IMG/VR virus record: IMGVR_UViG_3300036760_000522
Span: 124,001 to 188,000 of that record
Length of the DNA stretch: 64,000 nucleotides
Strand: one strand, 5' to 3'
Below, in pieces: positions 1-33,654 of this stretch. The position numbers and the translations under genes were made by a program. Under the pieces are notes generated by a model. That model did no database searches, was not told the origin of the DNA, and saw only the letters and a program-made list of their open reading frames with translations. Positions within the stretch are counted from its first letter, which is position 1. Every line of letters starts with the position of its first letter.

Positions 1-651
1 GTTGGGTGCCGAGAACGCCTGCTGTGTTGCGTCGGCGACCATCGAACCCTCCCAAAGGAACAAGCCCGCATAGTGGTCAGGGAACGCGTTGACGGTCGCT
101 TGTGCGAACATGGCGCCACCGACGTAGCCTCCAATCACGACCTTCTGGCTGGGGTTGTAGGCGGCAAGGACAAGGCCCCTCACGAACTCAGCGTCGTCGA
201 TCCTGGTCTGAACGGTCCAACTGCCCATCGCGAGACATCCGGTTGACTCACACGTCCCTGGGGCTTGCTTCGACAGCCTGTCGTCGATCACCCAGACATC
301 GAACCCTAGCGTTGCGAGGGAGCCCAGAAAGGACTTCCGGTAGTTGGTCGTCTCTGTGAGCTCGTACCATCGGACGTCGTATCCAAATGGTCCGTGAAGA
401 ATGACCGGCTTGTGTGAGTACGAAGACTTGACGCGAGTCACCCCAAACACGTTCAGAGGATCTGTCCCCTGCTGGACGGTGTGCTTGGTTCGTGTGAGAC
501 CCGTCGCAGGGTTGTCGATCACCGTGGCAGTGACAGAGTAGTCGCTGAGTGCTTGTGTGACCACCTCGACATCTTGTGAGGCTTGTTGATCAGGTGCGCC
601 TGAGCACGCAAAAAGTAGGGCAACGGCGAGTGTGATTTGGATGGTTTTCAT
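1..651 (-). CDS. Alpha/beta-hydrolase-fold lipoprotein (partial, runs off left edge); nucleophile position is Val
   Basis: Manual translation from ATG at 651, open to position 1 and absent from the ORF track. MKTIQITLAVALLFAC lipobox, VILHGPFG, LATLGFDVWVIDDR, KVVIGGYVGGAMFAQ, PDHYAGLFLWEG. Confidence 0.75.
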   Translation of the reverse strand, partial: MKTIQITLAVALLFACSGAPDQQASQDVEVVTQALSDYSVTATVIDNPATGLTRTKHTVQQGTDPLNVFGVTRVKSSYSHKPVILHGPFGYDVRWYELTETTNYRKSFLGSLATLGFDVWVIDDRLSKQAPGTCESTGCLAMGSWTVQTRIDDAEFVRGLVLAAYNPSQKVVIGGYVGGAMFAQATVNAFPDHYAGLFLWEGSMVADATQQAFSAPN

Positions 652-661
652 GATGTGGGGA

Positions 662-691
662 AACCTACGATCCAAAATACGATCAAGTCAA
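662..691 (-). promoter_or_regulatory. Sigma70-like promoter for the hydrolase-like gene
   Basis: TTGACT-N18-TAGGTT ending 10 nt upstream of the ATG, with a GATCGTA direct repeat inside. Confidence 0.4.
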
Positions 692-697
692 TATTTA

Positions 698-773
698 TGG
701 AGCGGGTGACCGGAATCGAACCGGCCGACATTTGCTTGGAAGGCAACGACCTCGCCATTGAGGTGACACCCGC
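698..773 (-). tRNA. tRNA-Gly(TCC), CCA encoded
   Basis: GCGGGTG/CACCCGC acceptor stem, CTTCCAA anticodon loop, GGTTCGATTCC T-arm, U73-CCA. Confidence 0.93.
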
Positions 774-781
774 GAGAATAG

Positions 782-853
782 CTGTAGGGGAGGGATTCGA
801 ACCCCCGATCTGTCGGTTAACAGCCGACCGCTTTACCGCTTAGCCACCCTACA
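782..853 (-). tRNA. tRNA-Asn(GTT)
   Basis: TGTAGGG/CCCTACA acceptor stem, GTCGG-CTGTTAA-CCGAC anticodon arm, GGTTCGAATCC T-arm. Confidence 0.93.
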
Positions 854-854
854 A

Positions 855-921
855 TGGCGTCCCATGACGGATTCGAACCGTCGCTACCTGCGTGAGAAGC
901 AAACGTCCTGAGCCACTAGAC
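855..921 (-). pseudogene. tRNA-Glu(CTC) lacking the 5' acceptor strand
   Basis: D arm GTCT..GGAC, TTCTCAC loop, T-arm and ATGGGAC-G-CCA are present. The upstream AATTGAAGG cannot pair with ATGGGAC. Confidence 0.75.
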
Positions 922-1093
922 CCTTCAATTCCCAATCGATCTGATCCCTACTTACGCGGATCACAAAACAAAGAAACAAGTTTGTGGGCAGATCGGTACC
1001 TTGGTGGGCACCGATCTGCCACACGAGTGAAAAACACGAATTGTCAAAAAGCAAGGTCCTCGAAAGGACTTTTGAAGAGACCTGAAGTCTCAG

Positions 1094-1165
1094 TTCCAGG
1101 AGCTGGAATCGAACCAGCGTTCCGTCGTTCAGAGCGACGTGGCCTACCAATTAGCCGATCCTGGA
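1094..1165 (-). tRNA. tRNA-Gln(CTG)
   Basis: TCCAGGA/TCCTGGA acceptor stem, CGTCG-CTCTGAA-CGACG anticodon arm, GGTTCGATTCC T-arm. Confidence 0.92.
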
Positions 1166-1181
1166 ATACGAACTTCTTCTG

Positions 1182-1254
1182 TGGGCTGCCCGAGAATCGA
1201 ACTCGGAACTTTCAGGTTAAGAACCTGCTACTCTACCTGTTGAGTTAGCAACCC
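1182..1254 (-). tRNA. tRNA-Lys(CTT)
   Basis: GGGTTGC/GCAGCCC acceptor stem, CAGG-TTCTTAA-CCTG anticodon arm, AGTTCGATTCT T-arm. Confidence 0.9.
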
Positions 1255-1260
1255 ATCAAG

Positions 1261-1333
1261 TGGAGGTGACAGGGATCGAACCTGCAATCTACGTGTTAAA
1301 AGCACGTTGCATTACCAATTTAGCTACACCTCC
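1261..1333 (-). tRNA. tRNA-Lys(TTT)
   Basis: GGAGGTG/CACCTCC acceptor stem, ACGTG-CTTTTAA-CACGT anticodon arm, GGTTCGATCCC T-arm. Confidence 0.92.
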
Positions 1334-1398
1334 ATTCGTTGTGTGCCCGCCTTCACGGGCTTGTGTTTCACTGTTTTCATGATCGTGTCTTTCTTTTG

Positions 1399-1481
1399 TG
1401 GGTCCGTGAAGAGTTGAACTTCTTAGCCAATGGCCCCACGTTTACAGCGTGAGTCGCGTTCCGACGACGAACCCCGGACCC
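1399..1481 (-). tRNA. Atypical tRNA-Tyr(GTA) with long variable arm and non-canonical D arm
   Basis: GGGTCCG/CGGACCC acceptor stem, CACG-CTGTAAA-CGTG anticodon arm, GGCC-ATT-GGCT variable arm, GTTCAACT T-loop. U8 is absent. Confidence 0.75.
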
Positions 1482-1490
1482 AGAAATGTC

Positions 1491-1520
1491 AAAAGCCGCC
1501 TCGGATTTCCCGGGCGGCTT
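1491..1520 (-). terminator. Intrinsic terminator (attenuator) immediately upstream of the tRNA array
   Basis: RNA AAGCCGCC-CGG-GAAAU-CCGA-GGCGGCUU-UU. Confidence 0.8.
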
Positions 1521-1560
1521 CAAAGAACAAAGTTTGGTGAGTTCTTTCTCAGCCGCCTCG
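1491..1560 (-). promoter_or_regulatory. Terminator/antiterminator switch overlapping the leader ORF stop codon
   Basis: AGCCGCCTCG occurs at both 1494-1503 and 1551-1560. AAAGAAC (1522-1528) and GTTCTTT (1541-1547) form an inner stem. The two hairpins are mutually exclusive. Confidence 0.7.
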
Positions 1561-1791
1561 ACAATACGTCTCCGAATTCATATACCGCTTCGCTGCTTCT
1601 CGTAGGCGTTGACTTGGCTGCGGGGGATTTTCGATGAGTCCCATTACTGTCGTAAACGCCTCAGCAGACAACGTGATGACAGTGTCGCTATCCAAACCAC
1701 GCGGGACATCTGACGCTCGGAGATCCGTGAGCGGTTTCCTGGGACCGTCAAGGTAGGTCACCGCTGGTGTGGGCCACAATTCACGAGGCAT
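1549..1791 (-). CDS. DUF1778/TacA C-terminal-like small protein; attenuator leader ORF
   Basis: ITLSAEAFTTVMGLIENPPQPSQRLREAAKRY resembles the C-terminal half of DUF1778. No RHH N-terminus is evident. Confidence 0.65.
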   Translation of the reverse strand: MPRELWPTPAVTYLDGPRKPLTDLRASDVPRGLDSDTVITLSAEAFTTVMGLIENPPQPSQRLREAAKRYMNSETYCRGG

Positions 1792-1800
1792 GACGGATCG

Positions 1801-1829
1801 AACCTGACAGGAACTAACTAGCCCGTCAA
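1801..1829 (-). promoter_or_regulatory. Sigma70-like promoter of the leader/tRNA operon
   Basis: TTGACG-N17-CAGGTT ending 9 nt upstream of ATG 1791. Confidence 0.45.
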
Positions 1830-1839
1830 GTGAAATCGT

Positions 1840-2154
1840 TCATCGGCACAGCTCCCCGAAATGATAGACTCTTATGTGATCGATCCCGGCACGCTCCTCA
1901 AGGAGTAAGGGTCTGTTTATGGAGTCCACGCTTGTCGGTCCGTAGACGACAAGCGTGTTGGCGTTTTCCGGCCAGTGCGCCAAGACTTCCCGTTTTGACA
2001 GGAACCGATACAAGGCAGGGGTTCCGCACAACGTGCCGCTCGTGTTGCTGCCCAAGTAGATGATCCTACTCGCACAACTGATCAGATGCACGAGTGCTGG
2101 CTGTGTGTTGTGGTCACGTCGGCAAATTCGTACGAGCCGACCACGTCCAAACAC
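1840..2154 (-). CDS. Hypothetical protein
   Basis: ORF fills the gap and has plausible composition. Confidence 0.35.
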   Translation of the reverse strand: MFGRGRLVRICRRDHNTQPALVHLISCASRIIYLGSNTSGTLCGTPALYRFLSKREVLAHWPENANTLVVYGPTSVDSINRPLLLEERAGIDHIRVYHFGELCR

Positions 2155-2250
2155 ACGGGCACTGGATGCGATCGCGAATTGAGCCGAACGGGTTGAAGGC
2201 TACGTAACTAGTGAAAGCTCTTGTGGCCTCGCCCCTGTCAGGTGAAGCCC

Positions 2251-2733
2251 ATGATGAAAAATCTAATCGCTCTTTGTGTCGTATCCACTCTCGTCTTCGG
2301 TTGCGAACGCACTCCGACGCCAGAAGACCTCAATAACCTTCGGGACACGGTGACCAAAGGTGTCGCCACCACGACGGCCTTGGTTGAATCCGCCAAGACG
2401 ACCTTCCAGGAGGCCGCAGAAGCCCTGAAACAGCCCGGCGGCTGTGCCAAGGTCCAAGGAATGGTCAAGACCATCACCCGGTCCGGTGAGGCGGCCATCG
2501 CCGCTGGTGCCCTCGTGCAGACAGCTTGCGCCATCCTCCCGCTGTTCAAACAAGACGACAAGACGATCCGAACGCTCACGGACGAAGTCTGTCCAACCGT
2601 CACCAAAATCACCGATGCCGTGCCTGCCATCCGAGAACAGGCTCTCGCGCTTGGTGCTCAAGCCGACAAACTTTGCTCGATGCTGAAGGTGGCGGAACCT
2701 TGTCCGGAACCTGCGCTTAACCTGAAGAAGTAA
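2251..2733 (+). CDS. Helical lipoprotein
   Basis: MKNLIALCVVSTLVFGC lipobox followed by amphipathic helices with Cys pairs. Confidence 0.75.
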   Translation: MMKNLIALCVVSTLVFGCERTPTPEDLNNLRDTVTKGVATTTALVESAKTTFQEAAEALKQPGGCAKVQGMVKTITRSGEAAIAAGALVQTACAILPLFKQDDKTIRTLTDEVCPTVTKITDAVPAIREQALALGAQADKLCSMLKVAEPCPEPALNLKK

Positions 2734-2739
2734 GCACCA

Positions 2740-3954
2740 GTGAAAACCAAAAACCTCATCTCAGATGGCGTCGTCGCTAGTGCAATGGCGCACTGGCGAT
2801 TCAACACTTTCGGCGCCCAGTCATTTCCGGTCGAAACCATATCCCCGTACGTCGTCAACATTGCCGACAATTCCTTCGTCTATCCTGCACACGAAATCTT
2901 GTTGGCTGGACGATACAACAGCTCATTTGAAGCTGAAATAATCATTGGTGGAGATGGCAGCGGAGCAGGTGTTGGGTCTAGCGCTGCTAGTGGCTGGCAC
3001 ATTTTGCCTGGGATTGCAGGCTTCGTAGCAGGCGGTACCAATACGCTAACAGTGCTGGGGGAGTACCAAGGGGTCTCGATTGCTGTAGAGCACGGCAGTC
3101 AGGACGTTTACCGCACCAGCAACTCTACTACGTTTTCAGTGGTCTCAACCGTCGCCCCAACGTCACACGGTCTTTCAGCCCTAGCCTTATCCCGCTCCAC
3201 TTTTCCCGGGCGTATCATAGTGGGCGTGTACGGCGCAGGCACCACACAAAACCGCATCTCTACAAGTGACAATGGCGGTGCATCTTGGACGATTCGCGCC
3301 GTCCCTACTTCGTGGAACGTGAGCCACATCTTCCACATCATACCCAGCCACACGTCGGATCTGATAGTGCTCGCCACGGGCAGCCTGTTGGGGTCCATTC
3401 TGCGTTCGACAGACAACGGAATCACTTGGTCTTCCATCACGCTGCCTTCTGAGTTCTCGAGCAGCTTCTTCGGCTGGGACACCTACCAAGTCGCGTGGAG
3501 TCCCGTCTGGCGGCAGTACCTGCTCTTGGACGGGTCTTTGCAGATGGCAGTTTCACCCGACGGCCTAAGCTGGACTGTCATACCTGGGTCTTCGGCTTCT
3601 GCTTACGCCAATATCATCGAGCCGTCAGGTACTGATCGCGGAAGACTTCTGGCTGCAAACGGTTCCGTGTTTTGCCTAGCTGCAAACACAAAGGGGCTTT
3701 CCAATGACTTGTACGTTCGCGGGGGTCTTTGGACAGCAAACGCCGGCAGAACCTGGAATTTCTCTGCGTTCGGAAATGCCAACAACAGCACGTCTTACCA
3801 TCTTCGTGGGATCAAGCCCTGGAGAAACGGATTTGCTGCGTTCAGTCAGTACGGAGTCTACTTGTCCGGATCCTTGAAATTCGAACATCCGACGTATGAC
3901 TTCGGCAGCTTACAAGCTGGTTTGCCCCACAACGACTTGGGTTACAACTTCTAA
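2740..3954 (+). CDS. Asp-box/BNR beta-propeller protein (putative virion or receptor-binding)
   Basis: SDNGGASW, STDNGITW, SPDGLSW, TANAGRTW repeats. Confidence 0.75.
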   Translation: MKTKNLISDGVVASAMAHWRFNTFGAQSFPVETISPYVVNIADNSFVYPAHEILLAGRYNSSFEAEIIIGGDGSGAGVGSSAASGWHILPGIAGFVAGGTNTLTVLGEYQGVSIAVEHGSQDVYRTSNSTTFSVVSTVAPTSHGLSALALSRSTFPGRIIVGVYGAGTTQNRISTSDNGGASWTIRAVPTSWNVSHIFHIIPSHTSDLIVLATGSLLGSILRSTDNGITWSSITLPSEFSSSFFGWDTYQVAWSPVWRQYLLLDGSLQMAVSPDGLSWTVIPGSSASAYANIIEPSGTDRGRLLAANGSVFCLAANTKGLSNDLYVRGGLWTANAGRTWNFSAFGNANNSTSYHLRGIKPWRNGFAAFSQYGVYLSGSLKFEHPTYDFGSLQAGLPHNDLGYNF

Positions 3955-12210: not shown

Positions 12211-12621
12211 TCATTGAGCAAACGGCGGCTGTCCGCGAAAAGCTGTATAGAACGGAATGCTCGCAGCCATTTGGTTTATCTGTGACATCTCCTCGTCCCC
12301 TTGATACGTCGTTGGGAGACGCGGGGTCGTTGCGGCAAGTGTTCGCAAGTGAGCGTCGCTTGTCACCCGCAAAAGGTCTTCTCTCGCGTGCTCATCCCTC
12401 TGCAAAATGAAAACGATCATATCGTCATCCAGATTGTCGAGAGTACAGATCCCTCCGGTGCCGTCGGGGGCTATCCCTTCGACCCAAACGTTGTTGTTGC
12501 GGTCTAGGTCGCACTTCGTCGGCTGAGGACCTGGATCTTCTTCAGGAAGGCAACAATCAGTTGGGATCGAGTCTTCGAGCGTGGGTAACGTGTTGCAGTC
12601 TTCGAGCGTGGGTAGTGACAT
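12211..12621 (-). CDS. Hypothetical acidic Cys-containing protein
   Basis: GAGG RBS; N-terminal LPTLED occurs twice. Confidence 0.65.
   Translation of the reverse strand: MSLPTLEDCNTLPTLEDSIPTDCCLPEEDPGPQPTKCDLDRNNNVWVEGIAPDGTGGICTLDNLDDDMIVFILQRDEHAREDLLRVTSDAHLRTLAATTPRLPTTYQGDEEMSQINQMAASIPFYTAFRGQPPFAQ
12570..12614. repeat. 18-bp direct repeat, 27-bp period, in frame
   Basis: AGTCTTCGAGCGTGGGTA at 12570-12587 and 12597-12614. Confidence 0.85.
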
Positions 12622-14876: not shown

Positions 14877-16410
14877 TACTGTCTCCTTCTAGCGACGACG
14901 CGTATCTGGCTCGAACACCGTCTCTTGAAATCGGATCGTACCCGATCCACTCGTGCAGCGCCTCAGCCTCACGAGAAAAAGCGCGTAGCAGCCTTGGTCT
15001 GTTGGTCAACGCCACTCCTACCTCATAAATGAGGTAGGAGTGCTTTAGGTAGGATTGCAACAAGGCGTCGTTGATAGATTGCTCGATCTCACTGCCTACA
15101 AGCCCGTGTGCGGCTTGCATCAGTTCGCTGCATTCTATGCTCGTGAGCTTCGAAGATGTGTGTTTGCGAAGATGGATATTCAGGATCTCCAGACATTCAG
15201 CAGGCGTTGGCGGACCAAAGAAAAACCGCTCATTACTGCGTCGAACGAAAGCAACAGGCAATGCTGCCATGTTGTTGACCGTGAATACAAAGCACAGCGG
15301 GGCTTTAGTCTCTTGTAGCCAGGTAGCGAACCGGGCATGCATACGCGAGGTAGTTCCCGCATCACTGTACGTCGATGACGGATCACCTGACAGGTTTCTT
15401 TCGGCTTCATCGATCCAAACCAAAGCAGGTGCAGACGCTTCCAGAATGTCAATTGCCTTGCGAACGTTCGATTCAGAATCCCCGAGTCCTCGTTCGCGTA
15501 AACGTCCGAAATCGAGTTCGAACAAGGGTAATTCCCAACAACCTGCAAGAGCGCGCACGGATAGACTTTTTCCACACCCCCAGAAACCAAGCAGGATCAA
15601 CCCGCGAGGCGGAACAAGTCCTTGTTTCTGCCCTTCAGGCGACCAAGTTGTTTTCTGATCCTGAGCCCACGATTTGAACCGATCGGCTCCGCCCAAATCA
15701 TCTAAAGACGCAACGTCTTTGACCAACGTCACAAGTCCGGTCGTCAGAAGGCGACGACTCTTCAGTTGAGTCACGTATTGCAGGTCAACCCGTGACTCGG
15801 GTACTGTAGAAGCAACGCTCTGACCAATGGCGGAACGGATCTCGTACGTCGACATGTCGCGAAACAGTGAAAGATCCGCAGGCGGCTCGACCTTGTGCTC
15901 TCGACAGATGCGGCCCACGAGGTTCTCCAGTCGCCGCTTGCTGATCCCCGGATCACGAACGACTTGAAGGTACCTTTCTAACGAACCCGGGATCGTGATC
16001 CTTGGTCCAAGAAAAATCACTGTCACACCAACCTTCGAAGCGTGGTTGCATACGTGAATGAGATCCAGGATCAGACGAACAATTAGCGCATCTCGAAACA
16101 GCCGCTCAGGATCTGTGAAAATCCAGTAACTCGCCTCCTGAACCAAAGGACGGATCTTTCTGAGAGCCTTGTCCGCGTCCTTTGTGGTTGGCTCAGCCTT
16201 GAAGGTCGTCGGCTCATGCCAACTTTTGAGCGCTGACACCAAGTTGACGAGGCCCATCGCCGGAGAGTAGAGATTGGCTTGCTCTGGTTTGTCCTTGAAA
16301 AGTTTCCCGAAATCTAACAGGAAACGATCTTCTTCGTCCGTCACGTAGTAGAGGAACCGGTTTCCCGCACATCGGTGGAAGTCCAGATCCGCTGACAAGC
16401 CAGTAGACAT
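14758..16410 (-). CDS. Ycf46/SpoVK-like AAA+ ATPase
   Basis: Walker A GFWGCGKS, Walker B LVWIDEAE, TVNN, RRSNERFF. Confidence 0.9.
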   Translation of the reverse strand: MSTGLSADLDFHRCAGNRFLYYVTDEEDRFLLDFGKLFKDKPEQANLYSPAMGLVNLVSALKSWHEPTTFKAEPTTKDADKALRKIRPLVQEASYWIFTDPERLFRDALIVRLILDLIHVCNHASKVGVTVIFLGPRITIPGSLERYLQVVRDPGISKRRLENLVGRICREHKVEPPADLSLFRDMSTYEIRSAIGQSVASTVPESRVDLQYVTQLKSRRLLTTGLVTLVKDVASLDDLGGADRFKSWAQDQKTTWSPEGQKQGLVPPRGLILLGFWGCGKSLSVRALAGCWELPLFELDFGRLRERGLGDSESNVRKAIDILEASAPALVWIDEAERNLSGDPSSTYSDAGTTSRMHARFATWLQETKAPLCFVFTVNNMAALPVAFVRRSNERFFFGPPTPAECLEILNIHLRKHTSSKLTSIECSELMQAAHGLVGSEIEQSINDALLQSYLKHSYLIYEVGVALTNRPRLLRAFSREAEALHEWIGYDPISRDGVRARYASSLEGDSNGSIVERNTDTIPCDDCPADSSGFVGSPIDTQGASVPSV

Positions 16411-20317: not shown

Positions 20318-20906
20318 GGCGAACTCTCTCACCGATCTTGTGCAGCAAAGCGTTGAGAGATTTTTTGGCTTCCTCGTAGCTCAAAGTCCCGTGTCGAACA
20401 GCGTAATCGATGCGATCCAATACGATGCCAGCAGCTGCGTAGCTCTTGAAGTTGTCGGTCCGAAGAAAATCGTCTCGCGTGCTACACAACCTAGTCTCTA
20501 CTTGCATCTGAAACTCTGACCACGACTCGTGTCGGCGATCAGAGACCTCTTTTACGGCATCGACACCTTCAGGAACTGGAGGTGTCGGGATCTGGTAGGC
20601 ACGCTCAATTTCCGAAAGGGTTTTCCCAAATGGCTGCTCTGAATCGTTGAACTTTCTCCAAAGAGCAATGACGTCCCAACGCTCTCGACAGACGAAACAC
20701 CAGGCTCCGCTGGGCCCCCCTGAAGACGTAAGATAGACTCGGGCACTCGGCTTCTCGTCCTTACCGTGAAAGGGACAAGAGATCTGCTCTTCCTTGTCGT
20801 GGCTTGAAAGCTTGATGCCGTGTTGGCGCAGAACGCTGTGCACAGACACTTGGTCATGAATTTTCGCAACCCGTTGTTTGTACCAAGCACGAAGTTCGTC
20901 ACTCAC
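20286..20906 (-). CDS. CHC2 zinc-finger protein (primase Zn-binding domain, no TOPRIM)
   Basis: CPFH.KDEKPSA...WCFVC...WDVI. Confidence 0.85.
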   Translation of the reverse strand: MSDELRAWYKQRVAKIHDQVSVHSVLRQHGIKLSSHDKEEQISCPFHGKDEKPSARVYLTSSGGPSGAWCFVCRERWDVIALWRKFNDSEQPFGKTLSEIERAYQIPTPPVPEGVDAVKEVSDRRHESWSEFQMQVETRLCSTRDDFLRTDNFKSYAAAGIVLDRIDYAVRHGTLSYEEAKKSLNALLHKIGERVRHGPASQNPDT

Positions 20907-23662
20907 AGTCCAGCCTCATTCAACAGTCGCAAATCCTCTTTGGTCAGCTCCTTGTTGTTGAAGGATTCCTGTCCTTCCAGGTTGCGCAACCTTCGAGCGT
21001 TCGCGAAGTCGACCTTCACCTTAATCTTGCTGAACAAGTCGTTGTCGCGGTTCTTAAGATTGCAAAAAATAGTCTCTCCTGCTGCCCGTAAGGAGTCGCA
21101 CAAATACGTCGTCGTCACGTAATCCGCGGAGCGTTCTGCCTCATTGGCATAAGACAAATTGCTGAACCGATACACACCCTCCTTCTCGGTCCCTTCCTGC
21201 TTGTCCGCTGCGTCTTTGCCCTGACGGTTGATCTGGTGCAACAACAAAACCGGTAAGCCAGTCCCCCCATTGAAATGTAGGGCAAGGAGCTTAGCGTCAA
21301 CAATTACTGTGTTGTGCTCAACAGTGTAGTCCTTGTGTGCCCGAGCAGCTTTGACAAGACCACTATGATCGACGACCAGTAGCCCAACATCCATCGATCG
21401 ATGAACGGACTCCGCATACACACGAATGTCATCGACACCGACTTTGCGATCAGGTGAATAGACCCGAATCTTGTGGTATTCAGGATTGTTCTCGAGATCG
21501 TGTAGGGCTTCTTTGTAGAAGGCTTCTTCCTCCCTAGTCAAGTCTCCGTCACGTACCTTGCGATAGTCCAAGGGTTGTCGACCCTGAGCTGTGAACTTCC
21601 CGTTGGATGTGTGCATCACAGCCAGTAGACGTCGCAAATGCTCGTACCGCATTTCGAGGCTGACGTACAGGCTGTGTGTGCGATAGCGTGTCGCCAGGTT
21701 GTAACACCAATTGATCGCAAAACTCGAATTGTGAGTGATAATGTCATTCGCTACGAAAGTGCGGTGCACAGGCACTGATAGGTCATAGGTCATTTCAACG
21801 CCCATTGAATTAACACTCTTGACACAATCCCAGTAAATATCGCCTGTGCTCACGCCAAATTTTTCAGCGACATCCGAGGTAACCGTGGGATTGTTTCTCG
21901 AGGCTGTACGAGCATACCTCCAATGTCCATTGATCTTAATGCGACGTCCATCTGGCAATAGACTAGAAGGCACAGGAGTCGAGTCTATTTTAGGTAGACG
22001 CGAAAGGAGTCGAGAAAATTTAGCCTCTTTGCCTACAATCCGAACTTTTTCACAGAACAACCGTTTGCTTGGATTGGTGACTATTCGGACAGTCCAGAAA
22101 CGATATGGGCGGTCCTCTACCTTTGTATTAACGAAAGTAACCGTTGATTTTATACCTAGACGTAGCAGCAGAGACTGTATGTCCTCACAAAGCTCTCTAC
22201 ACACGGACGAATAGGTGATGATGTGACTGGACTGCTTAGCACCTGTTCCGTCTTTGTTGATTCGATCCTTTCGAACGTAGTCGTCGGTGCAACAGGATCC
22301 GTTTGTTGACCACAAGGCTCCCAACAGAGCCGCGACAAGATCCTCGCTCATTCCAAAAAACTCACTTGGAATCCGCTTGTTGTAAGAGTCCGTCCCGTAA
22401 AGACCGAGCTGCTCTAAAAGAAGCCGAAGTGGAGAAACCGTACGATGCCACCGATCACCTAAACCGTGAGCAACTCGAACATACGGAACACGTTGGCCGC
22501 CCTGAGGAACATTTAGAGAAAACCAAGGATTTTCATAGTCGGGCTCTCCTTCTATGTAACCAAGGTCTCTCAAACAAGTAACGAAATCACACAAAATGGG
22601 CCCGTCTTGTTGTGTGAAGTTGATGCATTGTCCGATCGCACCGTCCCCGATGAGATAGCCAACCAATTTGACCTCTGAGAGCGAGTACGGTCGTGCCCCC
22701 ACAGCCCTCATGACTTTGGGGGTCGCTACAAAGTCCCCTTCCTTCAATGACGACAACGACTCCCATCCGAAAGGAGTGAGAAATTTGTGATTGGAGGTGG
22801 CACCTATACGCCGGCCTGACACAAGTAACAGTTCAAATATTTCACGTCTTCCGTTCTGAACTAGATGTGAAGCCGGAGTTTGTACAAGTACTGGGCTTGC
22901 CCCTTCATTTTGGATCGCTGACACTACCGGCAAGTCGCCGCAGGCGTACAGCTCTGACAGGCGCCGACGTCGTTGGGTGCGGTGGTCAAATACTGTAGTG
23001 TCTCCTGCTAGGCATTTCAACTCTCCTGTCGCGGCAGCGTGAACCCACAGTTCTCCTTTCTTGATGCCATGGCACGTTTTGTCAATATGATCAATGCCTG
23101 TGAACTTCCCATAAGCCTTGTCTTTCTGTGACTTGGCATCTTGGTACTCTGTCCACACACGTTCCGTATCGTGTACGATGTCCCCTTCAATTTGAATGTT
23201 GTGGTCTCGAGGAACCTCCTCGTAGACGTGTTGGTTGAAGTACTGTAGCGCGTGTGTGACGCCTTTCAGCTGTGTCTTGCCTTCGACACGTCCCCTCGTG
23301 ATGATCTCTTCGACGTCACGTAGCAGTTTTCGAACCTTGTTCTGGGCCTGTTCCTCACGTAGCGTTCTGAGTAGCGTGCCGTAGTTACTACGAGTGTAGG
23401 CTTCGACTGTTTTGATGTCGGCAAGTTTTTCGACAACCGTTATTTCGTTATTTCGTTCGAAGTAATCTCGAATCGACGCCCAGTCCGGAGGTTCCAGATT
23501 CTGTTGAACGTACTCCTGTACGTAGGTCCAGATCTTGGTTTCATCAGGGTTGTGCCACTCAAACCCTGATCTCAATAGACGACGATAGTTGCCGTCTATT
23601 TGCTCAATCGTGAGCTTAGCATCCCCAAAATCGATGATGCCCCGTAAAAGCCGTTTGGACAT
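20903..23662 (-). CDS. dnaB: DnaB-like replicative helicase with intein
   Basis: Walker A AAATGELK|SS split by the intein; SLEM, VVDH, HQINR, AERSAD, LKNR. Confidence 0.92.
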   Translation of the reverse strand: MSKRLLRGIIDFGDAKLTIEQIDGNYRRLLRSGFEWHNPDETKIWTYVQEYVQQNLEPPDWASIRDYFERNNEITVVEKLADIKTVEAYTRSNYGTLLRTLREEQAQNKVRKLLRDVEEIITRGRVEGKTQLKGVTHALQYFNQHVYEEVPRDHNIQIEGDIVHDTERVWTEYQDAKSQKDKAYGKFTGIDHIDKTCHGIKKGELWVHAAATGELKCLAGDTTVFDHRTQRRRRLSELYACGDLPVVSAIQNEGASPVLVQTPASHLVQNGRREIFELLLVSGRRIGATSNHKFLTPFGWESLSSLKEGDFVATPKVMRAVGARPYSLSEVKLVGYLIGDGAIGQCINFTQQDGPILCDFVTCLRDLGYIEGEPDYENPWFSLNVPQGGQRVPYVRVAHGLGDRWHRTVSPLRLLLEQLGLYGTDSYNKRIPSEFFGMSEDLVAALLGALWSTNGSCCTDDYVRKDRINKDGTGAKQSSHIITYSSVCRELCEDIQSLLLRLGIKSTVTFVNTKVEDRPYRFWTVRIVTNPSKRLFCEKVRIVGKEAKFSRLLSRLPKIDSTPVPSSLLPDGRRIKINGHWRYARTASRNNPTVTSDVAEKFGVSTGDIYWDCVKSVNSMGVEMTYDLSVPVHRTFVANDIITHNSSFAINWCYNLATRYRTHSLYVSLEMRYEHLRRLLAVMHTSNGKFTAQGRQPLDYRKVRDGDLTREEEAFYKEALHDLENNPEYHKIRVYSPDRKVGVDDIRVYAESVHRSMDVGLLVVDHSGLVKAARAHKDYTVEHNTVIVDAKLLALHFNGGTGLPVLLLHQINRQGKDAADKQEGTEKEGVYRFSNLSYANEAERSADYVTTTYLCDSLRAAGETIFCNLKNRDNDLFSKIKVKVDFANARRLRNLEGQESFNNKELTKEDLRLLNEAGL
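21728..23014 (-). mobile_element. Intein (429 aa) with LAGLIDADG homing endonuclease, inserted in the DnaB P-loop
   Basis: K|CLAGDT start and TYDLSVPVHRTFVANDIITHN|S end; endonuclease motifs LVGYLIGDG and LLGALWSTNG. Confidence 0.93.
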
Positions 23663-30135: not shown

Positions 30136-33100
30136 TTACGCAGTCTCGCGACGGGGCGGAGGCCGCGTGGAGACTTTGACGATGTTGGGGCCGATGCTCC
30201 TCTCGCCTGTGGTTCGCGCAACGGCCTTCCACTGTCGATGCTTGCCGTTGAAGCTCACCGCCATGCCCAATGCCTCCAGTGTTTCCAATGCAGGGACAAC
30301 TGCGTCCGCCGAAGCGCCAATGTACAACGCAGCGACATCATTGGCTGTTAGGGCCTCGCTGCTAGCTACGATGAAATCTCGAATCGCCGCGACCTGCTGC
30401 GGCAACTCCATTGGCCACGGCAACTGAAGCTGGTGTTCTGGCGCCTCTGGCACACGCACAGCCCGAGGAACGGCCCCCTTTGCTTCTTGGAAAGCAGGTC
30501 GCAGCCAACGAACCGTTCCGGACGACTCCTCGGCGGTGCGCACTTGATTCAGAGTGAGTAGTTTCTCCAGAACGATGTCGTCAGAGAGCCCTCCTGACCA
30601 ACCATAGGCACTACATACGGCCTCATCGAGGTCTGAATGAAGCCTCTGTAGGCCCGAGACCAAGCCCTGGTCGTAGCTCAGTCTCTCTTTGTCCGTCAGC
30701 GGTTCACCAGACCGGAGCTTCTCGAGCACATTGTACATTGCAGTGATCGTTAGCTGCGGGTGTGCGGCCTGCTGGCGCCTGCGATGGCCATCAAGTTGTT
30801 CACCCAGATCGCGAATGCACTGTCGCTGTGTCTCCGTGGCGGACGGGAAAGGAAAAGTCTCAAAGCAGCGCGTCTTATTGTAGCGAGGCCGATCCTCGAG
30901 GGTTCCACCAGCGGCTAACGCCCACGCAACATGTATCCGACTGGATAGAACACCGAGTACATATGCGTCGTCGGCTGCTATGTTCACGAGCATGTTATCC
31001 GGAAGCACGGCTTCGTCGAGGAAAACGAACACTCGGTGCTTGGCTGTTTCGACCGTCGCAATGAAACGTGAGAGCCCAACAAGTGCGGGGCGAAAGGCAC
31101 TCCGAGGCTCGCCGTGTATCCACCAGTTGTCGCGGTAGACTGCTCGTCTATTTTGGTCTCTCTCCGGTTTGACCGTGTCGTGGATGTGTTGAAACACTTC
31201 CGGGAAGCGTTTTTGGACTTGCCCGAGGGTTAGGCCAAACAAGTCGATGACCCAGACTCCTCGAGGAGTCTGGGTCACGTCACGCCCATTTCGGTACTCG
31301 CGAATGTGCCGTTCGAGTCCTTCTTTTCGACCCAACCCGAGCTGTTCTGCTTTGTCCGGCCTGACGACAAATCCCGAGCCGTGGAGCTTAACACCAGGGC
31401 AGCTCAAGGCTTCATTGGAGCGAAGCGGAGCCGCACTCGAAACGTCTGCTCCGACTGAGAGATCGGCAGAGATAGTGCCGATGCGTGTGGCGAGTTCAAT
31501 AGTGGCACCGAGGCTCCCCTGGTTAGACTCGCATTGGACCGACAGCAGTCGACCAGCATGAATTCCGGCTTGGCCAACCGTCATGGAGATTCGTACCGCG
31601 GCACCATCCGCAGAGTCGACCCAAGGATGGTCTGGGATGGCGAAGACCAATGATAGTGGCTCCTTGTCGCTCAGGTGGGTTCTGACAACTCTGCGGTTGA
31701 AGGTCTGCCGCAGGCTGTTGGTAGCAATGAATCCGAATCGCCTTGCACGCCCTGCACGAACGAGTTCTGCGGCCTTGTGCCACCAGTACATCACGTAGTC
31801 ACACGACTCGGGAAGCTCCGGGTAAGCGTCGCGGATGGTTTCAGCATAGCCCTCCCCAAGTGTCCCGCGCATTCGTCCATTGCCCACGAATGGGGGGTTC
31901 CCTACGATGAAATCCGCGGCTGGCCAGTCAGCCCTCCTTGGGTTGATATACCGAACAACAGGCACCTGCGCCGTTTCATCTGGGACCTCGTCGCCGGTCA
32001 CATGGCTCTTCTTCATCGTCTCGCCGTCCCAAAAGGTCAGCAATGCGCCTGTGTGCTCATTGCGAGCTTCTTCTTCATGATCGTAAGCGAGCACCGCATC
32101 TCTGCATTCGATATTCTTGTCGTCCCTCAGGATTGGTTCTGGAGGTGTTTTTGACTGCCCGTACATCTTGTGATGCCATTGCAGGTAGCCGATCCACAGA
32201 ACCAGCTCGGCGATCTCCTTCGACCCACGACGGGCCTCGATACCTTTGAACTGTCGAGGCGTCACCATCATGTTTTCGCCCAGTTCCTGTTGCTTCATAC
32301 CCAGGTCGAAAAGCGTCGCCAGGACCTCGCTTTCCAAACGCTTGAAAAGGTTGAGCGCAACATAGAGAAAATTTGCAGATCCACAGGCCGGGTCGAGCAC
32401 GGTCGTGTTGCAGAGCTTCTCCAAAAATTCTCGAACAACGGACTGAGCTTCGTTTACTCTCTTTGGCGGCGAGAACTCGCCCGGTGGCACTAGCTGTCGA
32501 ACCCTGACTCGTACGATGTCCCATTCGGCGCGCAGTGGTTCCTCGATGGTCGGAACAAGCAAACGCTCTACGTACGAAGTCGGAGTAAAATGCGCGCCCA
32601 ACTTGTGACGCTCCTTCGGATCCAGGGCTCGCTCAATAAGCGTGCCAAAAATCGCTGGCTGCACGTCACACCACTCGCGCTTGGCTGCTTTGAGCAATAT
32701 TCTCAATTGCGTTGCCTCAAGGGGTAACGCCTCCGGATCCGCGAAAAGTCCACCATTGAACTGCAAGAGCTTTCCGAGAATGAAGAAGCTTTTCCCAGAA
32801 TTCATCGCGTCCCAAAGTGCCTCGACACCAGTCTTGAACGATGACGGATCCGGAATCCATGTTTTCTCCAAAGCGGTGGTGAACACCTTTTCTCGCAAAA
32901 GACCGATATCTTCGGCAAACATTGTGAAGACGCACCGCATCAGAAACCTCGCCACGACCTCGGACGAGTAACTGGTTTTTTCGAGTTCGCCAGCGAGGAC
33001 GGCAAGGTCGGTTGCAATTTCGCGAGTCACCTCCTCAGACTTGCGTGCCGGGTCGAGACTGCGAGGGTCAAGCCAGATCGCCCGCAAACAGTCAGAATGG

Positions 33101-33654
33101 TTTGCCAGGTCACTCAGGAAGATGCGGTTCTTCTGGTTATTCGGATAGGCGTGGTAGGCCCCACTGCCGTCAAAGCACGCGAACAGATCGAAACAGTACC
33201 CGATGTCGGTGACGATCACGAATGGGGGTGGCTGCGCCACGCCTTTCGTGTAGCGAAGAGCCTGACCTTGGGCAGCGTTCATTGCCGAACTCCAGCCTGG
33301 AGTTCCTCGTACTGCGGTTCCCTTCTTTTTACTGCCCTTGTTGGACCCCTGCTTGGCCTCCAACACGAAGCACCCCTGTTTGTACAGATCCATCAAGCCA
33401 GATTTTTGACCGTCGTGTTCGTGAATGACAGCGTCGGCTTCGAAGACGTAGACGTCCTGTTCTGGATCGCCCGTCTTTGCGTTGGGCTCCGGAACGCCGA
33501 GGGCTCTGCACAAATCTTTGCAGAAGCTATCCTTGTTTGCGCGTTCACTGCCCTCGCTGTGTTGCCAGCGGGCTATGAAGTCGTCGATTGGCACTAGTGT
33601 ATCGCTTTCGGCGATTGGTGGCCCACGCAGACGAACCAGTCCGTCAGACTGCAT
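30136..33654 (-). CDS. MmeI-like type IIL restriction-modification enzyme (endonuclease, m6A MTase and TRD)
   Basis: DLYKQGCFVLEAK, GAHFTP, LDPACGSANF, GNPPF, TAKHRVF, RPRYNKTRCFETFPFP. Confidence 0.92.
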   Translation of the reverse strand: MQSDGLVRLRGPPIAESDTLVPIDDFIARWQHSEGSERANKDSFCKDLCRALGVPEPNAKTGDPEQDVYVFEADAVIHEHDGQKSGLMDLYKQGCFVLEAKQGSNKGSKKKGTAVRGTPGWSSAMNAAQGQALRYTKGVAQPPPFVIVTDIGYCFDLFACFDGSGAYHAYPNNQKNRIFLSDLANHSDCLRAIWLDPRSLDPARKSEEVTREIATDLAVLAGELEKTSYSSEVVARFLMRCVFTMFAEDIGLLREKVFTTALEKTWIPDPSSFKTGVEALWDAMNSGKSFFILGKLLQFNGGLFADPEALPLEATQLRILLKAAKREWCDVQPAIFGTLIERALDPKERHKLGAHFTPTSYVERLLVPTIEEPLRAEWDIVRVRVRQLVPPGEFSPPKRVNEAQSVVREFLEKLCNTTVLDPACGSANFLYVALNLFKRLESEVLATLFDLGMKQQELGENMMVTPRQFKGIEARRGSKEIAELVLWIGYLQWHHKMYGQSKTPPEPILRDDKNIECRDAVLAYDHEEEARNEHTGALLTFWDGETMKKSHVTGDEVPDETAQVPVVRYINPRRADWPAADFIVGNPPFVGNGRMRGTLGEGYAETIRDAYPELPESCDYVMYWWHKAAELVRAGRARRFGFIATNSLRQTFNRRVVRTHLSDKEPLSLVFAIPDHPWVDSADGAAVRISMTVGQAGIHAGRLLSVQCESNQGSLGATIELATRIGTISADLSVGADVSSAAPLRSNEALSCPGVKLHGSGFVVRPDKAEQLGLGRKEGLERHIREYRNGRDVTQTPRGVWVIDLFGLTLGQVQKRFPEVFQHIHDTVKPERDQNRRAVYRDNWWIHGEPRSAFRPALVGLSRFIATVETAKHRVFVFLDEAVLPDNMLVNIAADDAYVLGVLSSRIHVAWALAAGGTLEDRPRYNKTRCFETFPFPSATETQRQCIRDLGEQLDGHRRRQQAAHPQLTITAMYNVLEKLRSGEPLTDKERLSYDQGLVSGLQRLHSDLDEAVCSAYGWSGGLSDDIVLEKLLTLNQVRTAEESSGTVRWLRPAFQEAKGAVPRAVRVPEAPEHQLQLPWPMELPQQVAAIRDFIVASSEALTANDVAALYIGASADAVVPALETLEALGMAVSFNGKHRQWKAVARTTGERSIGPNIVKVSTRPPPRRETA

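What the first reader, a model, noticed from the sequence alone, without database searches (positions are those of the whole stretch)
1491..1581. Translation-coupled attenuator gating the phage tRNA array
Seen: the last codons and stop of ORF 1549-1791 (CGA GGC GGC UGA) repeat the 3' arm of a U-tailed terminator about 57 nt downstream. CGAGGCGGCU-GAG-AAAGAAC…GUUCUUU-GA-AGCCGCCCG forms a long antiterminator that sequesters the terminator's 5' arm. The first tRNA starts about 10 nt after the U-tract. The last ten codons (MNSETYCRGG, with its own ATG at 1581) include AAU, GAG and UAU, which are read by array-type tRNAs Asn(GUU), Glu(CUC) and Tyr(GUA). Inference by analogy to trp/his attenuation: a ribosome reaching the stop blocks the antiterminator and keeps the array off. 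Stalling caused by tRNA depletion or cleavage switches the array on, making the phage tRNAs an inducible repair response.
Basis: partly seen in the sequence, partly recalled or inferred. Interest (0 to 1): 0.82.

Follow-up and report, generated by a model that had tools for sequence, protein, structure and literature searches.

The report
Possible translation-sensing terminator before phage tRNAs
At the end of a small antitoxin-like gene of a giant phage, just before its tRNA genes, a stop signal for transcription can fold in two mutually exclusive ways, one of them blocked by a ribosome at the stop codon. This looks like a classical attenuator, but it rests on folding predictions alone.

Summary
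The sequence features are real and lie on the minus strand. An 80-codon ORF (1791-1549) ends in CGA GGC GGC UGA. The 10-mer CGAGGCGGCU (1560-1551) recurs at 1503-1494 as the 3' arm of a strong hairpin (1521-1492, -21 kcal/mol) followed by UUUU. The shared partner AGCCGCCCG (1519-1511) can pair with either copy. The upstream pairing (-24.3 kcal/mol) forms first in co-transcriptional folds, and 0.2-0.4% of random genomic upstream segments pair as well. Modelling a ribosome on the last five sense codons or the stop gives 100% terminator.

The architecture therefore fits translation-coupled attenuation. The tRNA-depletion part is not supported:
- Codons read by the array tRNAs are not enriched (P=0.30).
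- The "first tRNA" (Tyr-like, 1481-1398) is a sub-threshold call.
- tRNA-Glu(CUC) is 5'-truncated in this genome.
- The tRNA region holds at least 16 tRNA genes or tRNA-like calls, interspersed ORFs and further hairpins.

Only one distinct relative exists; it differs by 3 nt in the terminator loop, so covariation is untestable.

The ORF is an orphan, RHH-less TacA/AtaR-type antitoxin fragment. Verdict: a plausible but unproven variant of ribosome-mediated attenuation. A plain terminator with a fortuitous repeat is almost as likely.

The parts
1549..1791 (-). 80-aa ORF. It is an orphan TacA/AtaR/KacA-type (DUF1778) antitoxin fragment that keeps the C-terminal toxin-neutralising half only. The last 10 codons extend beyond the end of the family.
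   Evidence: Pfam PF08681: 26.3 bits against a cutoff of 21, residues 33-70 matching profile positions 41-78. PDB AtaR 6gtq/6ajm and KacA 5zgn match chain residues about 51-85. Against L002 there are 6 synonymous and 2 non-synonymous codon differences.
1551..1560 (-). Upstream copy (R1) of CGAGGCGGCU, forming the 5' arm of the antiterminator. It covers the last three sense codons and the first base of the stop codon UGA (1551-1549).
1522..1547 (-). Inner 7-bp hairpin, AAAGAAC / 12-nt loop / GUUCUUU. It is present in both states and extends the antiterminator.
1511..1519 (-). Shared arm (R') AGCCGCCCG. It pairs either with R1 (antiterminator) or with R2 (terminator).
1491..1521 (-). Intrinsic-terminator-like hairpin: 12 pairs with one bulged A and loop GAAAU. 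Its 3' arm R2 is at 1503-1494, followed by the UUUU tract 1494-1491.
   Evidence: -21.1 kcal/mol. It is among about 5 strongest hairpin-plus-U sites in the window. It resembles the terminator of the RcsR1 sRNA model, 20.3 bits, below the gathering score. In L002 only the loop differs.
1398..1481 (-). tRNA-Tyr(GUA)-like cloverleaf with a long variable arm, a 4-bp T stem and extra bases at positions 8-9. It is sub-threshold.
   Evidence: ARAGORN calls it only at -ps80. There is no Rfam tRNA hit at E<=10. Fold -32.9 kcal/mol, z -2.45.
1093..1333 (-). Confident tRNAs: Lys(UUU) 1333-1260, Lys(CUU) 1254-1181 and Gln(CUG) 1165-1093.
922..1092 (-). Structured spacer inside the array. It holds a weak terminator-like hairpin (1069-1056 plus a U tract) and a 14-bp hairpin (1020-987).
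   Evidence: z -4.2
701..921 (-). tRNA-Glu(CUC), 5'-truncated (921-855); tRNA-Asn(GUU) 853-781; tRNA-Gly(UCC) 773-701.

Best explanation
The element is the intrinsic terminator of an orphan TacA-like gene, placed at the 5' border of a jumbo phage's tRNA region and built as a two-state switch. The terminator's 5' arm (1519-1511) can pair with its normal 3' arm (1503-1494). It can also pair with an identical copy of that arm (1560-1551) that overlaps the last codons and the stop codon.

Proposed working:
- On RNA without a ribosome at the ORF end, the upstream pairing forms first and the polymerase reads through into the tRNA genes.
- A ribosome that closely follows the polymerase and sits on the last codons or the stop melts the upstream arm. 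The terminator then forms and transcription stops before the tRNAs.
- Transcription of at least the first tRNA sub-cluster from the tacA-like promoter would then rise whenever translation lags behind transcription.

Shown: the sequence, the two pairings, their energies, their order of appearance, and their rarity by chance. Inferred: that the hairpin terminates, that host transcription and translation are coupled, and that the tRNAs depend on this transcript.
For: - The exact 10-nt arm copy contains the stop codon.
- Antiterminator -24.3 against terminator -21.1 kcal/mol; whole states -28.1 against -29.2.
- In growing-chain folds the antiterminator appears as soon as position 1512 is made, in three different 5' contexts. 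It persists to 1491 in two of the three.
- Without a ribosome, P(antiterminator) is 0.60 and P(terminator) 0.40. With a footprint on the last five sense codons or the stop, P(terminator) is 1.00.
- The stop codon lies 28 nt before the terminator stem, so a terminating ribosome does not cover the terminator itself.
- A competitor this strong occurs for 0.18-0.375% of random genomic upstream segments, and there are only about 5 comparable terminator-like hairpins in the window.
- In the only divergent relative, all 3 differences across the last ten codons, the leader and the Tyr-like gene fall in the terminator loop. They add a base pair (-23.2 kcal/mol) and leave the antiterminator unchanged.
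- The last 10 codons that carry the upstream arm lie beyond the end of the TacA/AtaR family alignment.
- No gap for a promoter exists between the U-tract and the Tyr-like gene, which are 9 nt apart.
Against:
- Only two distinct sequences exist, with 3 differences in the leader, so covariation cannot be tested.
- The U-tract is short (4 U) and the generic terminator scan missed the site.
- With a ribosome stalled upstream, equilibrium favours the terminator, so the switch works only if it is kinetically trapped.
- An anti-antiterminator ('region 1') is no better than chance: 51% of random segments pair as well.
- The ORF has 80 codons and carries a protein domain; it is not a short leader peptide.
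- The ORF has no Shine-Dalgarno-like sequence, and the host and its degree of transcription-translation coupling are unknown.
- No other ORF-to-tRNA junction in the same tRNA region has a similar design.
- Further hairpins inside the array imply that later tRNAs are not governed by this site alone.
Confidence: 0.4

Rival explanations
1. This is an ordinary, constitutive and possibly leaky intrinsic terminator that ends the tacA-like transcript. The upstream copy of its 3' arm is a fortuitous GC-rich repeat (the codons GGC GGC) with no regulatory role. The tRNAs are made by basal read-through or from a promoter of unknown type.
For: - About 13 loci in the window carry nearby direct repeats of 10 nt or more.
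- The hairpin closely resembles a generic terminator, the RcsR1 model.
- In translated mRNA, ribosomes would remove the competitor anyway.
- The design is not repeated at other tRNA junctions.
- The same 12-nt motif TTTTGACAWTTC follows both hairpins of the array. This suggests a common terminator or terminator-plus-TTGAC-box module rather than a unique switch.
Against: - The competitor's strength is reached by only 0.2-0.4% of random upstream segments.
- The copy is exact over 10 nt, includes the same bulged A, and sits on the stop codon.
- The antiterminator is at least as stable as the terminator and forms first, so on untranslated RNA it should impair a 'plain' terminator.
Confidence: 0.35
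2. Ribosome stalling at AAU, GAG or UAU in the last ten codons, caused by depletion or cleavage of the matching host tRNAs, opens the gate. The array is then an inducible repair response to anticodon nucleases.
For: - The geometry fits for stalls at AAG 1590, UAU 1584, AAU 1578 and, marginally, GAG 1572. These lie 10-30 nt upstream of the arm.
- Phage tRNAs are known to counter tRNA-targeting defences (PMC11464382, PMC11555353).
- The adjacent gene resembles an antitoxin of tRNA-acetylating GNAT toxins (PMC9177977).
Against: - Codons read by first-cluster tRNAs: 3 of the last 10 (expected 1.9, P=0.30), 5 of the last 14 (P=0.115), and 11 of 79 overall (expected 15.2). There are no tandem regulatory codons.
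- A stall at UAU 1566 would cover the arm and favour termination.
- The Tyr gene is sub-threshold and the Glu(CUC) gene is truncated in this genome.
- The phage carries tRNAs for many amino acids, so any codon set would overlap with 'array' tRNAs.
Confidence: 0.08
3. This is an RNA processing or stability element. The two alternative hairpins serve as 3'-end protection for the tacA-like mRNA after RNase P/E releases the downstream tRNAs, or as a processing signal at the head of the tRNA precursor. They do not act as a transcriptional switch.
For: - Hairpins also punctuate the interior of the array: 1089-1075, 1069-1056 and 1020-987, with spacer z -4.2.
- The Tyr-like structure begins 10 nt after the hairpin, so 5' processing would leave the hairpin at the mRNA's 3' end.
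Against: A single hairpin would be enough for protection. This idea does not explain why an exact copy of the arm overlaps the stop codon, nor the U-tract.
Confidence: 0.12

Closest known systems
Ribosome-mediated (leader-peptide) transcription attenuators of enterobacterial trp, his, phe and pheST operons
   Same: - An intrinsic terminator whose 5' arm can instead pair with an upstream segment.
- A stop codon placed so that a terminating ribosome occludes that segment and lets the terminator form.
- About 60 nt between the stop and the U-tract.
- The terminator is thermodynamically at least competitive, so control would be kinetic.
- pheST shows that components of the translation apparatus can be regulated this way (established knowledge).
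   Different: - The translated ORF has 80 codons and encodes a recognisable protein domain, not a 14-30-codon leader.
- There is no run of regulatory codons.
- There is no significant 1:2 anti-antiterminator or pause hairpin, so untranslated RNA is predicted to read through rather than super-attenuate.
- The downstream genes are tRNAs in a phage. The paper searches found no described case of this.
Plain Rho-independent terminators at gene ends, for example the terminator of the Rhizobiales sRNA RcsR1 (Rfam RF02552)
   Same: The hairpin has nearly the same sequence and shape, including the bulged A, and is followed by U residues.
   Different: An exact second copy of the 3' arm lies upstream and overlaps the stop codon. 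The score is below the family threshold, so this is a resemblance of terminators, not membership.
DUF1778 antitoxins TacA/AtaR/KacA of GNAT (TacT/AtaT/KacT) toxin-antitoxin modules
   Same: Residues 33-70 of the ORF match the C-terminal toxin-neutralising segment.
   Different: - No ribbon-helix-helix N-terminal half.
- No adjacent GNAT toxin.
- It is encoded by a phage, next to tRNA genes.
- Similar RHH-less motifs occur in a 255-aa protein of Shewanella phage SXP01, and three times in tandem in metagenomic protein P0005.
Phage tRNA clusters used against tRNA-targeting defences (T5 tRNA-Tyr against retron/PtuAB, viral tRNA-Lys against PARIS)
   Same: It is a phage tRNA cluster that includes Lys, Tyr-like, Asn, Gln and Glu species (PMC11464382, PMC11555353).
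   Different: No regulated expression of such arrays by attenuation is described in those papers' abstracts. Here the repertoire is broad, with at least 16 tRNA genes or tRNA-like calls, as expected for a general translational supplement.

Membership tests
Ribosome-mediated transcription attenuator | Intrinsic terminator directly upstream of the regulated genes | tested here: met
   Hairpin 1521-1492 at -21.1 kcal/mol plus UUUU, 9 nt before the Tyr-like gene. Function as a terminator is not shown.
Ribosome-mediated transcription attenuator | Mutually exclusive antiterminator that uses the terminator's 5' arm | tested here: met
   1560-1551 pairs with 1519-1511. Energy -24.3 kcal/mol; 0.18-0.375% of random segments pair as well.
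Ribosome-mediated transcription attenuator | Translated ORF whose stop lets a terminating ribosome block the antiterminator | tested here: met
   The stop at 1551-1549 lies inside the arm. Footprint modelling gives P(terminator)=1.00. The ORF is supported as coding.
Ribosome-mediated transcription attenuator | Short leader peptide with clustered regulatory codons | tested here: not met
   The ORF has 80 codons and a Pfam domain. Codons of array tRNAs are not enriched, P=0.30 and 0.115.
Ribosome-mediated transcription attenuator | Upstream anti-antiterminator or pause hairpin (1:2) | tested here: inconclusive
   An 8-bp pairing of 1609-1601 with the arm exists, but 51% of random segments do as well.
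Ribosome-mediated transcription attenuator | Both pairings conserved, with compensatory changes, in relatives | tested here: inconclusive
   Only L002 differs, by 3 nt in the terminator loop; L018 is identical. Viral, metagenome and protein searches gave no further relatives.
Ribosome-mediated transcription attenuator | Read-through responds to translation of the leader | not testable with these tools
Rho-independent terminator | GC-rich stem-loop immediately followed by a U-rich tract | tested here: inconclusive
   The stem is strong, but there are only 4 U before GACAUUU. The generic scan, which requires at least 5 T in 8, did not list it.
DUF1778 / TacA antitoxin | Match to PF08681 above the gathering score | tested here: met
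   26.3 bits against 21, but only profile positions 41-78 match. PDB AtaR and KacA C-terminal segments also match.
DUF1778 / TacA antitoxin | N-terminal ribbon-helix-helix DNA-binding half | tested here: not met
   Residues 1-32 match nothing, and profile positions 1-40 are unmatched.
DUF1778 / TacA antitoxin | Adjacent GNAT toxin gene | tested here: not met
   Downstream lie the terminator and the tRNAs. The upstream ORF has no Pfam family, and atlas leads point to a methyltransferase-like fold.
tRNA (for 1481-1398) | Detection by standard tRNA models | tested here: not met
   ARAGORN with default settings and Rfam RF00005 at E<=10 do not call it; only ARAGORN at an 80% threshold does.
Known cis-regulatory RNA (T-box, riboswitch, other Rfam leader) | Match to an Rfam family | tested here: not met
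   No hit reaches any gathering score in 1385-1600 or in 1-3000.

The most novel reading that the evidence does not exclude
A phage tunes its own tRNA supply by feedback from translation. The terminator in front of the tRNA region opens whenever ribosomes fail to keep up on the preceding antitoxin-like gene, for instance after host tRNA-targeting or translation-blocking defences act. Together with the RHH-less TacA-like protein, this would form a 'tRNA protection' module.
Probability: 0.12. Interest if true: 0.8.

Novelty: new variant of a known kind. Interest (0 to 1): 0.45.

Why it matters
If the switch works, it would be the first case I could find of tRNA genes placed under ribosome-mediated attenuation. 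It would also show that a phage can sense the state of host translation and respond by making tRNAs. That bears on the current question of why phages carry tRNAs: codon supply, or escape from tRNA-targeting immunity. If it is only a terminator with a fortuitous repeat, the locus is ordinary. The orphan RHH-less TacA-like gene would remain a candidate anti-toxin decoy worth testing in its own right.

Tried and rejected
- Relatives of the 80-aa ORF. The viral scan gave only the source contig and one 98%-identical relative. The metagenome scan gave only false hits in LepA genes. The 5.8-billion-protein search gave one hit. The 1.8-billion-representative search gave repeat proteins and one short contig. 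The tblastn search of GenBank phages found RHH-less motif proteins without tRNAs nearby.\n- Synteny through the 426-aa neighbour.

Full report
**Setting.** The window is part of IMGVR_UViG_3300036760_000522, a 301.5-kb phage-like contig. It encodes a family A DNA polymerase, a DnaB-type helicase with an intein, other helicases and an MmeI-type restriction-modification enzyme. Everything relevant to the finding lies on the minus strand.

**Check of the observation.**
- ORF 1791-1549 (80 aa) ends CGA GGC GGC UGA.
- The 10-mer CGAGGCGGCU occurs exactly twice, at 1560-1551 and 1503-1494.
- Between the two copies lie a 7-bp hairpin (1547-1541 / 1528-1522) and AGCCGCCCG (1519-1511), which is complementary to both copies.
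- The downstream pairing gives a hairpin of 12 pairs with one bulged A (1521-1492, -21.1 kcal/mol), followed by UUUU and then GACAUUU.
- The upstream pairing, stacked on the inner hairpin, gives -24.3 kcal/mol.
- The two complete states differ by about 1 kcal/mol.
- The generic terminator scan did not list the site because the U-tract is short.
- My own scan found only about five hairpin-plus-U sites of comparable strength on both strands of the window. The Rfam search aligned the hairpin to the terminator of the RcsR1 sRNA model, below threshold.

**Is the second pairing more than chance?**
- A nearby 10-nt direct repeat alone is not rare; about 13 loci in the window have one.
- The relevant question is how often the 45 nt upstream of a given terminator arm pair with it this well.
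- The energy gain is -16.5 kcal/mol against a mean of -4.95 for genomic 45-mers, and 0.18% are as good.
- As a duplex it is -17.8 against -8.7, and 0.375% are as good.
- With about five candidate terminators, the corrected chance is on the order of 1-2%.

**Behaviour in silico.**
- In growing-chain folds the upstream pairing appears as soon as position 1512 is available, whatever the 5' context. It is still the minimum-energy state at 1491 in two of three contexts.
- Ensemble probabilities without a ribosome are 0.60 antiterminator and 0.40 terminator.
- With a 28-30-nt footprint on any of the last five sense codons or the stop, the terminator probability is 1.00.
- With a footprint further upstream, equilibrium still favours the terminator (0.65-1.00). 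Read-through would therefore have to be kinetic, as in the trp attenuator, where the terminator is also the more stable helix (established knowledge).
- A possible 'region 1' (1609-1601) pairs with the upstream arm but no better than half of random segments. Untranslated RNA is therefore predicted to read through, not to super-attenuate.

**The ORF.**
- It is a real coding candidate, with 6 synonymous and 2 non-synonymous codon differences from the relative.
- It matches Pfam TacA1 (DUF1778) above threshold, but only in the C-terminal half.
- It aligns to residues about 51-85 of AtaR and KacA structures.
- DUF1778 antitoxins normally carry an RHH DNA-binding domain and sit next to GNAT toxins that acetylate aminoacyl-tRNAs (PMC9177977). 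Here the RHH half and the toxin are both absent.
- The last ten codons, which carry the upstream arm, lie beyond the family's C-terminus.

**The tRNAs.**
- Confident genes in the first cluster are Lys(UUU), Lys(CUU), Gln(CUG), Asn(GUU) and Gly(UCC).
- The gene immediately after the hairpin (1481-1398, anticodon loop CUGUAAA) folds as a long-arm cloverleaf. Only ARAGORN at a relaxed threshold calls it; the Rfam model does not.
- tRNA-Glu(CUC) lacks its 5' part in this genome but is intact in the relative.
- The cluster is interrupted by a strongly structured 171-nt spacer with a weak terminator-like hairpin and a 14-bp hairpin.
- Beyond the window the same strand carries nine more tRNAs over several kilobases, interspersed with ORFs.
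- Codons read by first-cluster tRNAs are not enriched near the ORF end.
- No other ORF-to-tRNA junction shows a comparable switch.

**Comparative evidence.**
- Only one distinct relative was found, IMGVR_UViG_3300037424_001177.
- The last ten codons, the leader and the Tyr-like gene are identical to the window except for three adjacent bases in the terminator loop (AAU to CCC). This change adds a pair to the terminator and leaves the antiterminator untouched.
- This is consistent with the structure but far too little for covariation.
- All other routes to relatives failed.
- Read data could not be consulted.

**Interpretation.**
- The anatomy is that of a ribosome-dependent terminator, and I rate a working translation-coupled switch at about 0.4.
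- A plain terminator with an incidental repeat is almost as likely (0.35).
- The paper searches found no described attenuator in front of tRNA genes. If real, this is a new variant of a known kind.

Noticed in passing
window 1549-1791 (-); L009 2974-3741; protein P0005: The ORF is an RHH-less, toxin-less TacA/AtaR-type C-terminal motif encoded by a phage next to tRNA genes. The same motif opens a 255-aa protein of Shewanella phage SXP01 and occurs three times in tandem in a 134-aa metagenomic protein. These may be decoy antitoxins against GNAT toxins.
   Followed up: partly
window 855-970 (-) versus L002 4790-4881: tRNA-Glu(CUC) is 5'-truncated in the window (67 nt, Rfam model positions 9-63), next to about 48 nt that the relative lacks. 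In the relative the gene is intact (76 nt, 62.6 bits).
   Followed up: partly
L002 4883-5410: In the relative, tRNA-Asn carries a 12-nt insertion (85 nt). A 147-aa minus-strand ORF with no family match sits between tRNA-Asn and tRNA-Gly. It may be a mobile insertion in the array.
   Followed up: no
window 1483-1494 (-) and 1038-1049 (-): The 12-mer TTTTGACAWTTC follows both terminator-like hairpins of the tRNA cluster. The 11-mer TTTTGACAWTT has no other exact match in the window. It contains a perfect TTGACA box but has no -10 partner.
   Followed up: partly
window 922-1092 (-): The spacer between tRNA-Gln and tRNA-Glu is unusually structured (z -4.2), with a 14-bp perfect hairpin at 1020-987. 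Its function is unknown.
   Followed up: partly
window 1840-2154 (-) versus L002 3405-3965: The gene upstream of the TacA-like ORF has 186 aa in the relative. In the window it has a replaced N-terminal region, and homology starts at residue 98. Atlas leads point to a phage family with a methyltransferase-like fold.
   Followed up: partly
L001 5117-6397 (window 1-675, -): The 426-aa ORF between the tRNA sub-clusters has no Pfam family. Its 54%-identical relatives sit in bacterial chromosomal contexts (Ser/Thr kinase, sigma-54 activator, RND efflux). This suggests acquisition from a host-like bacterium.
   Followed up: partly
window 20903-23662 (-): A DnaB-like helicase is interrupted by an intein with a LAGLIDADG endonuclease domain.
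   Followed up: no
window 30136-33654 (-): A complete MmeI-type restriction-modification enzyme (N-terminal, helicase-spacer, methyltransferase and TRD domains) is encoded by the phage.
   Followed up: no
window 15011-15043 (+) and 12570-12615 (+): At 15011-15043 a near-perfect hairpin of about 13 pairs (-22.8 kcal/mol) lies inside the AAA-ATPase ORF region. At 12570 and 12597 there is an 18-nt direct repeat spaced 27 nt apart.
   Followed up: no
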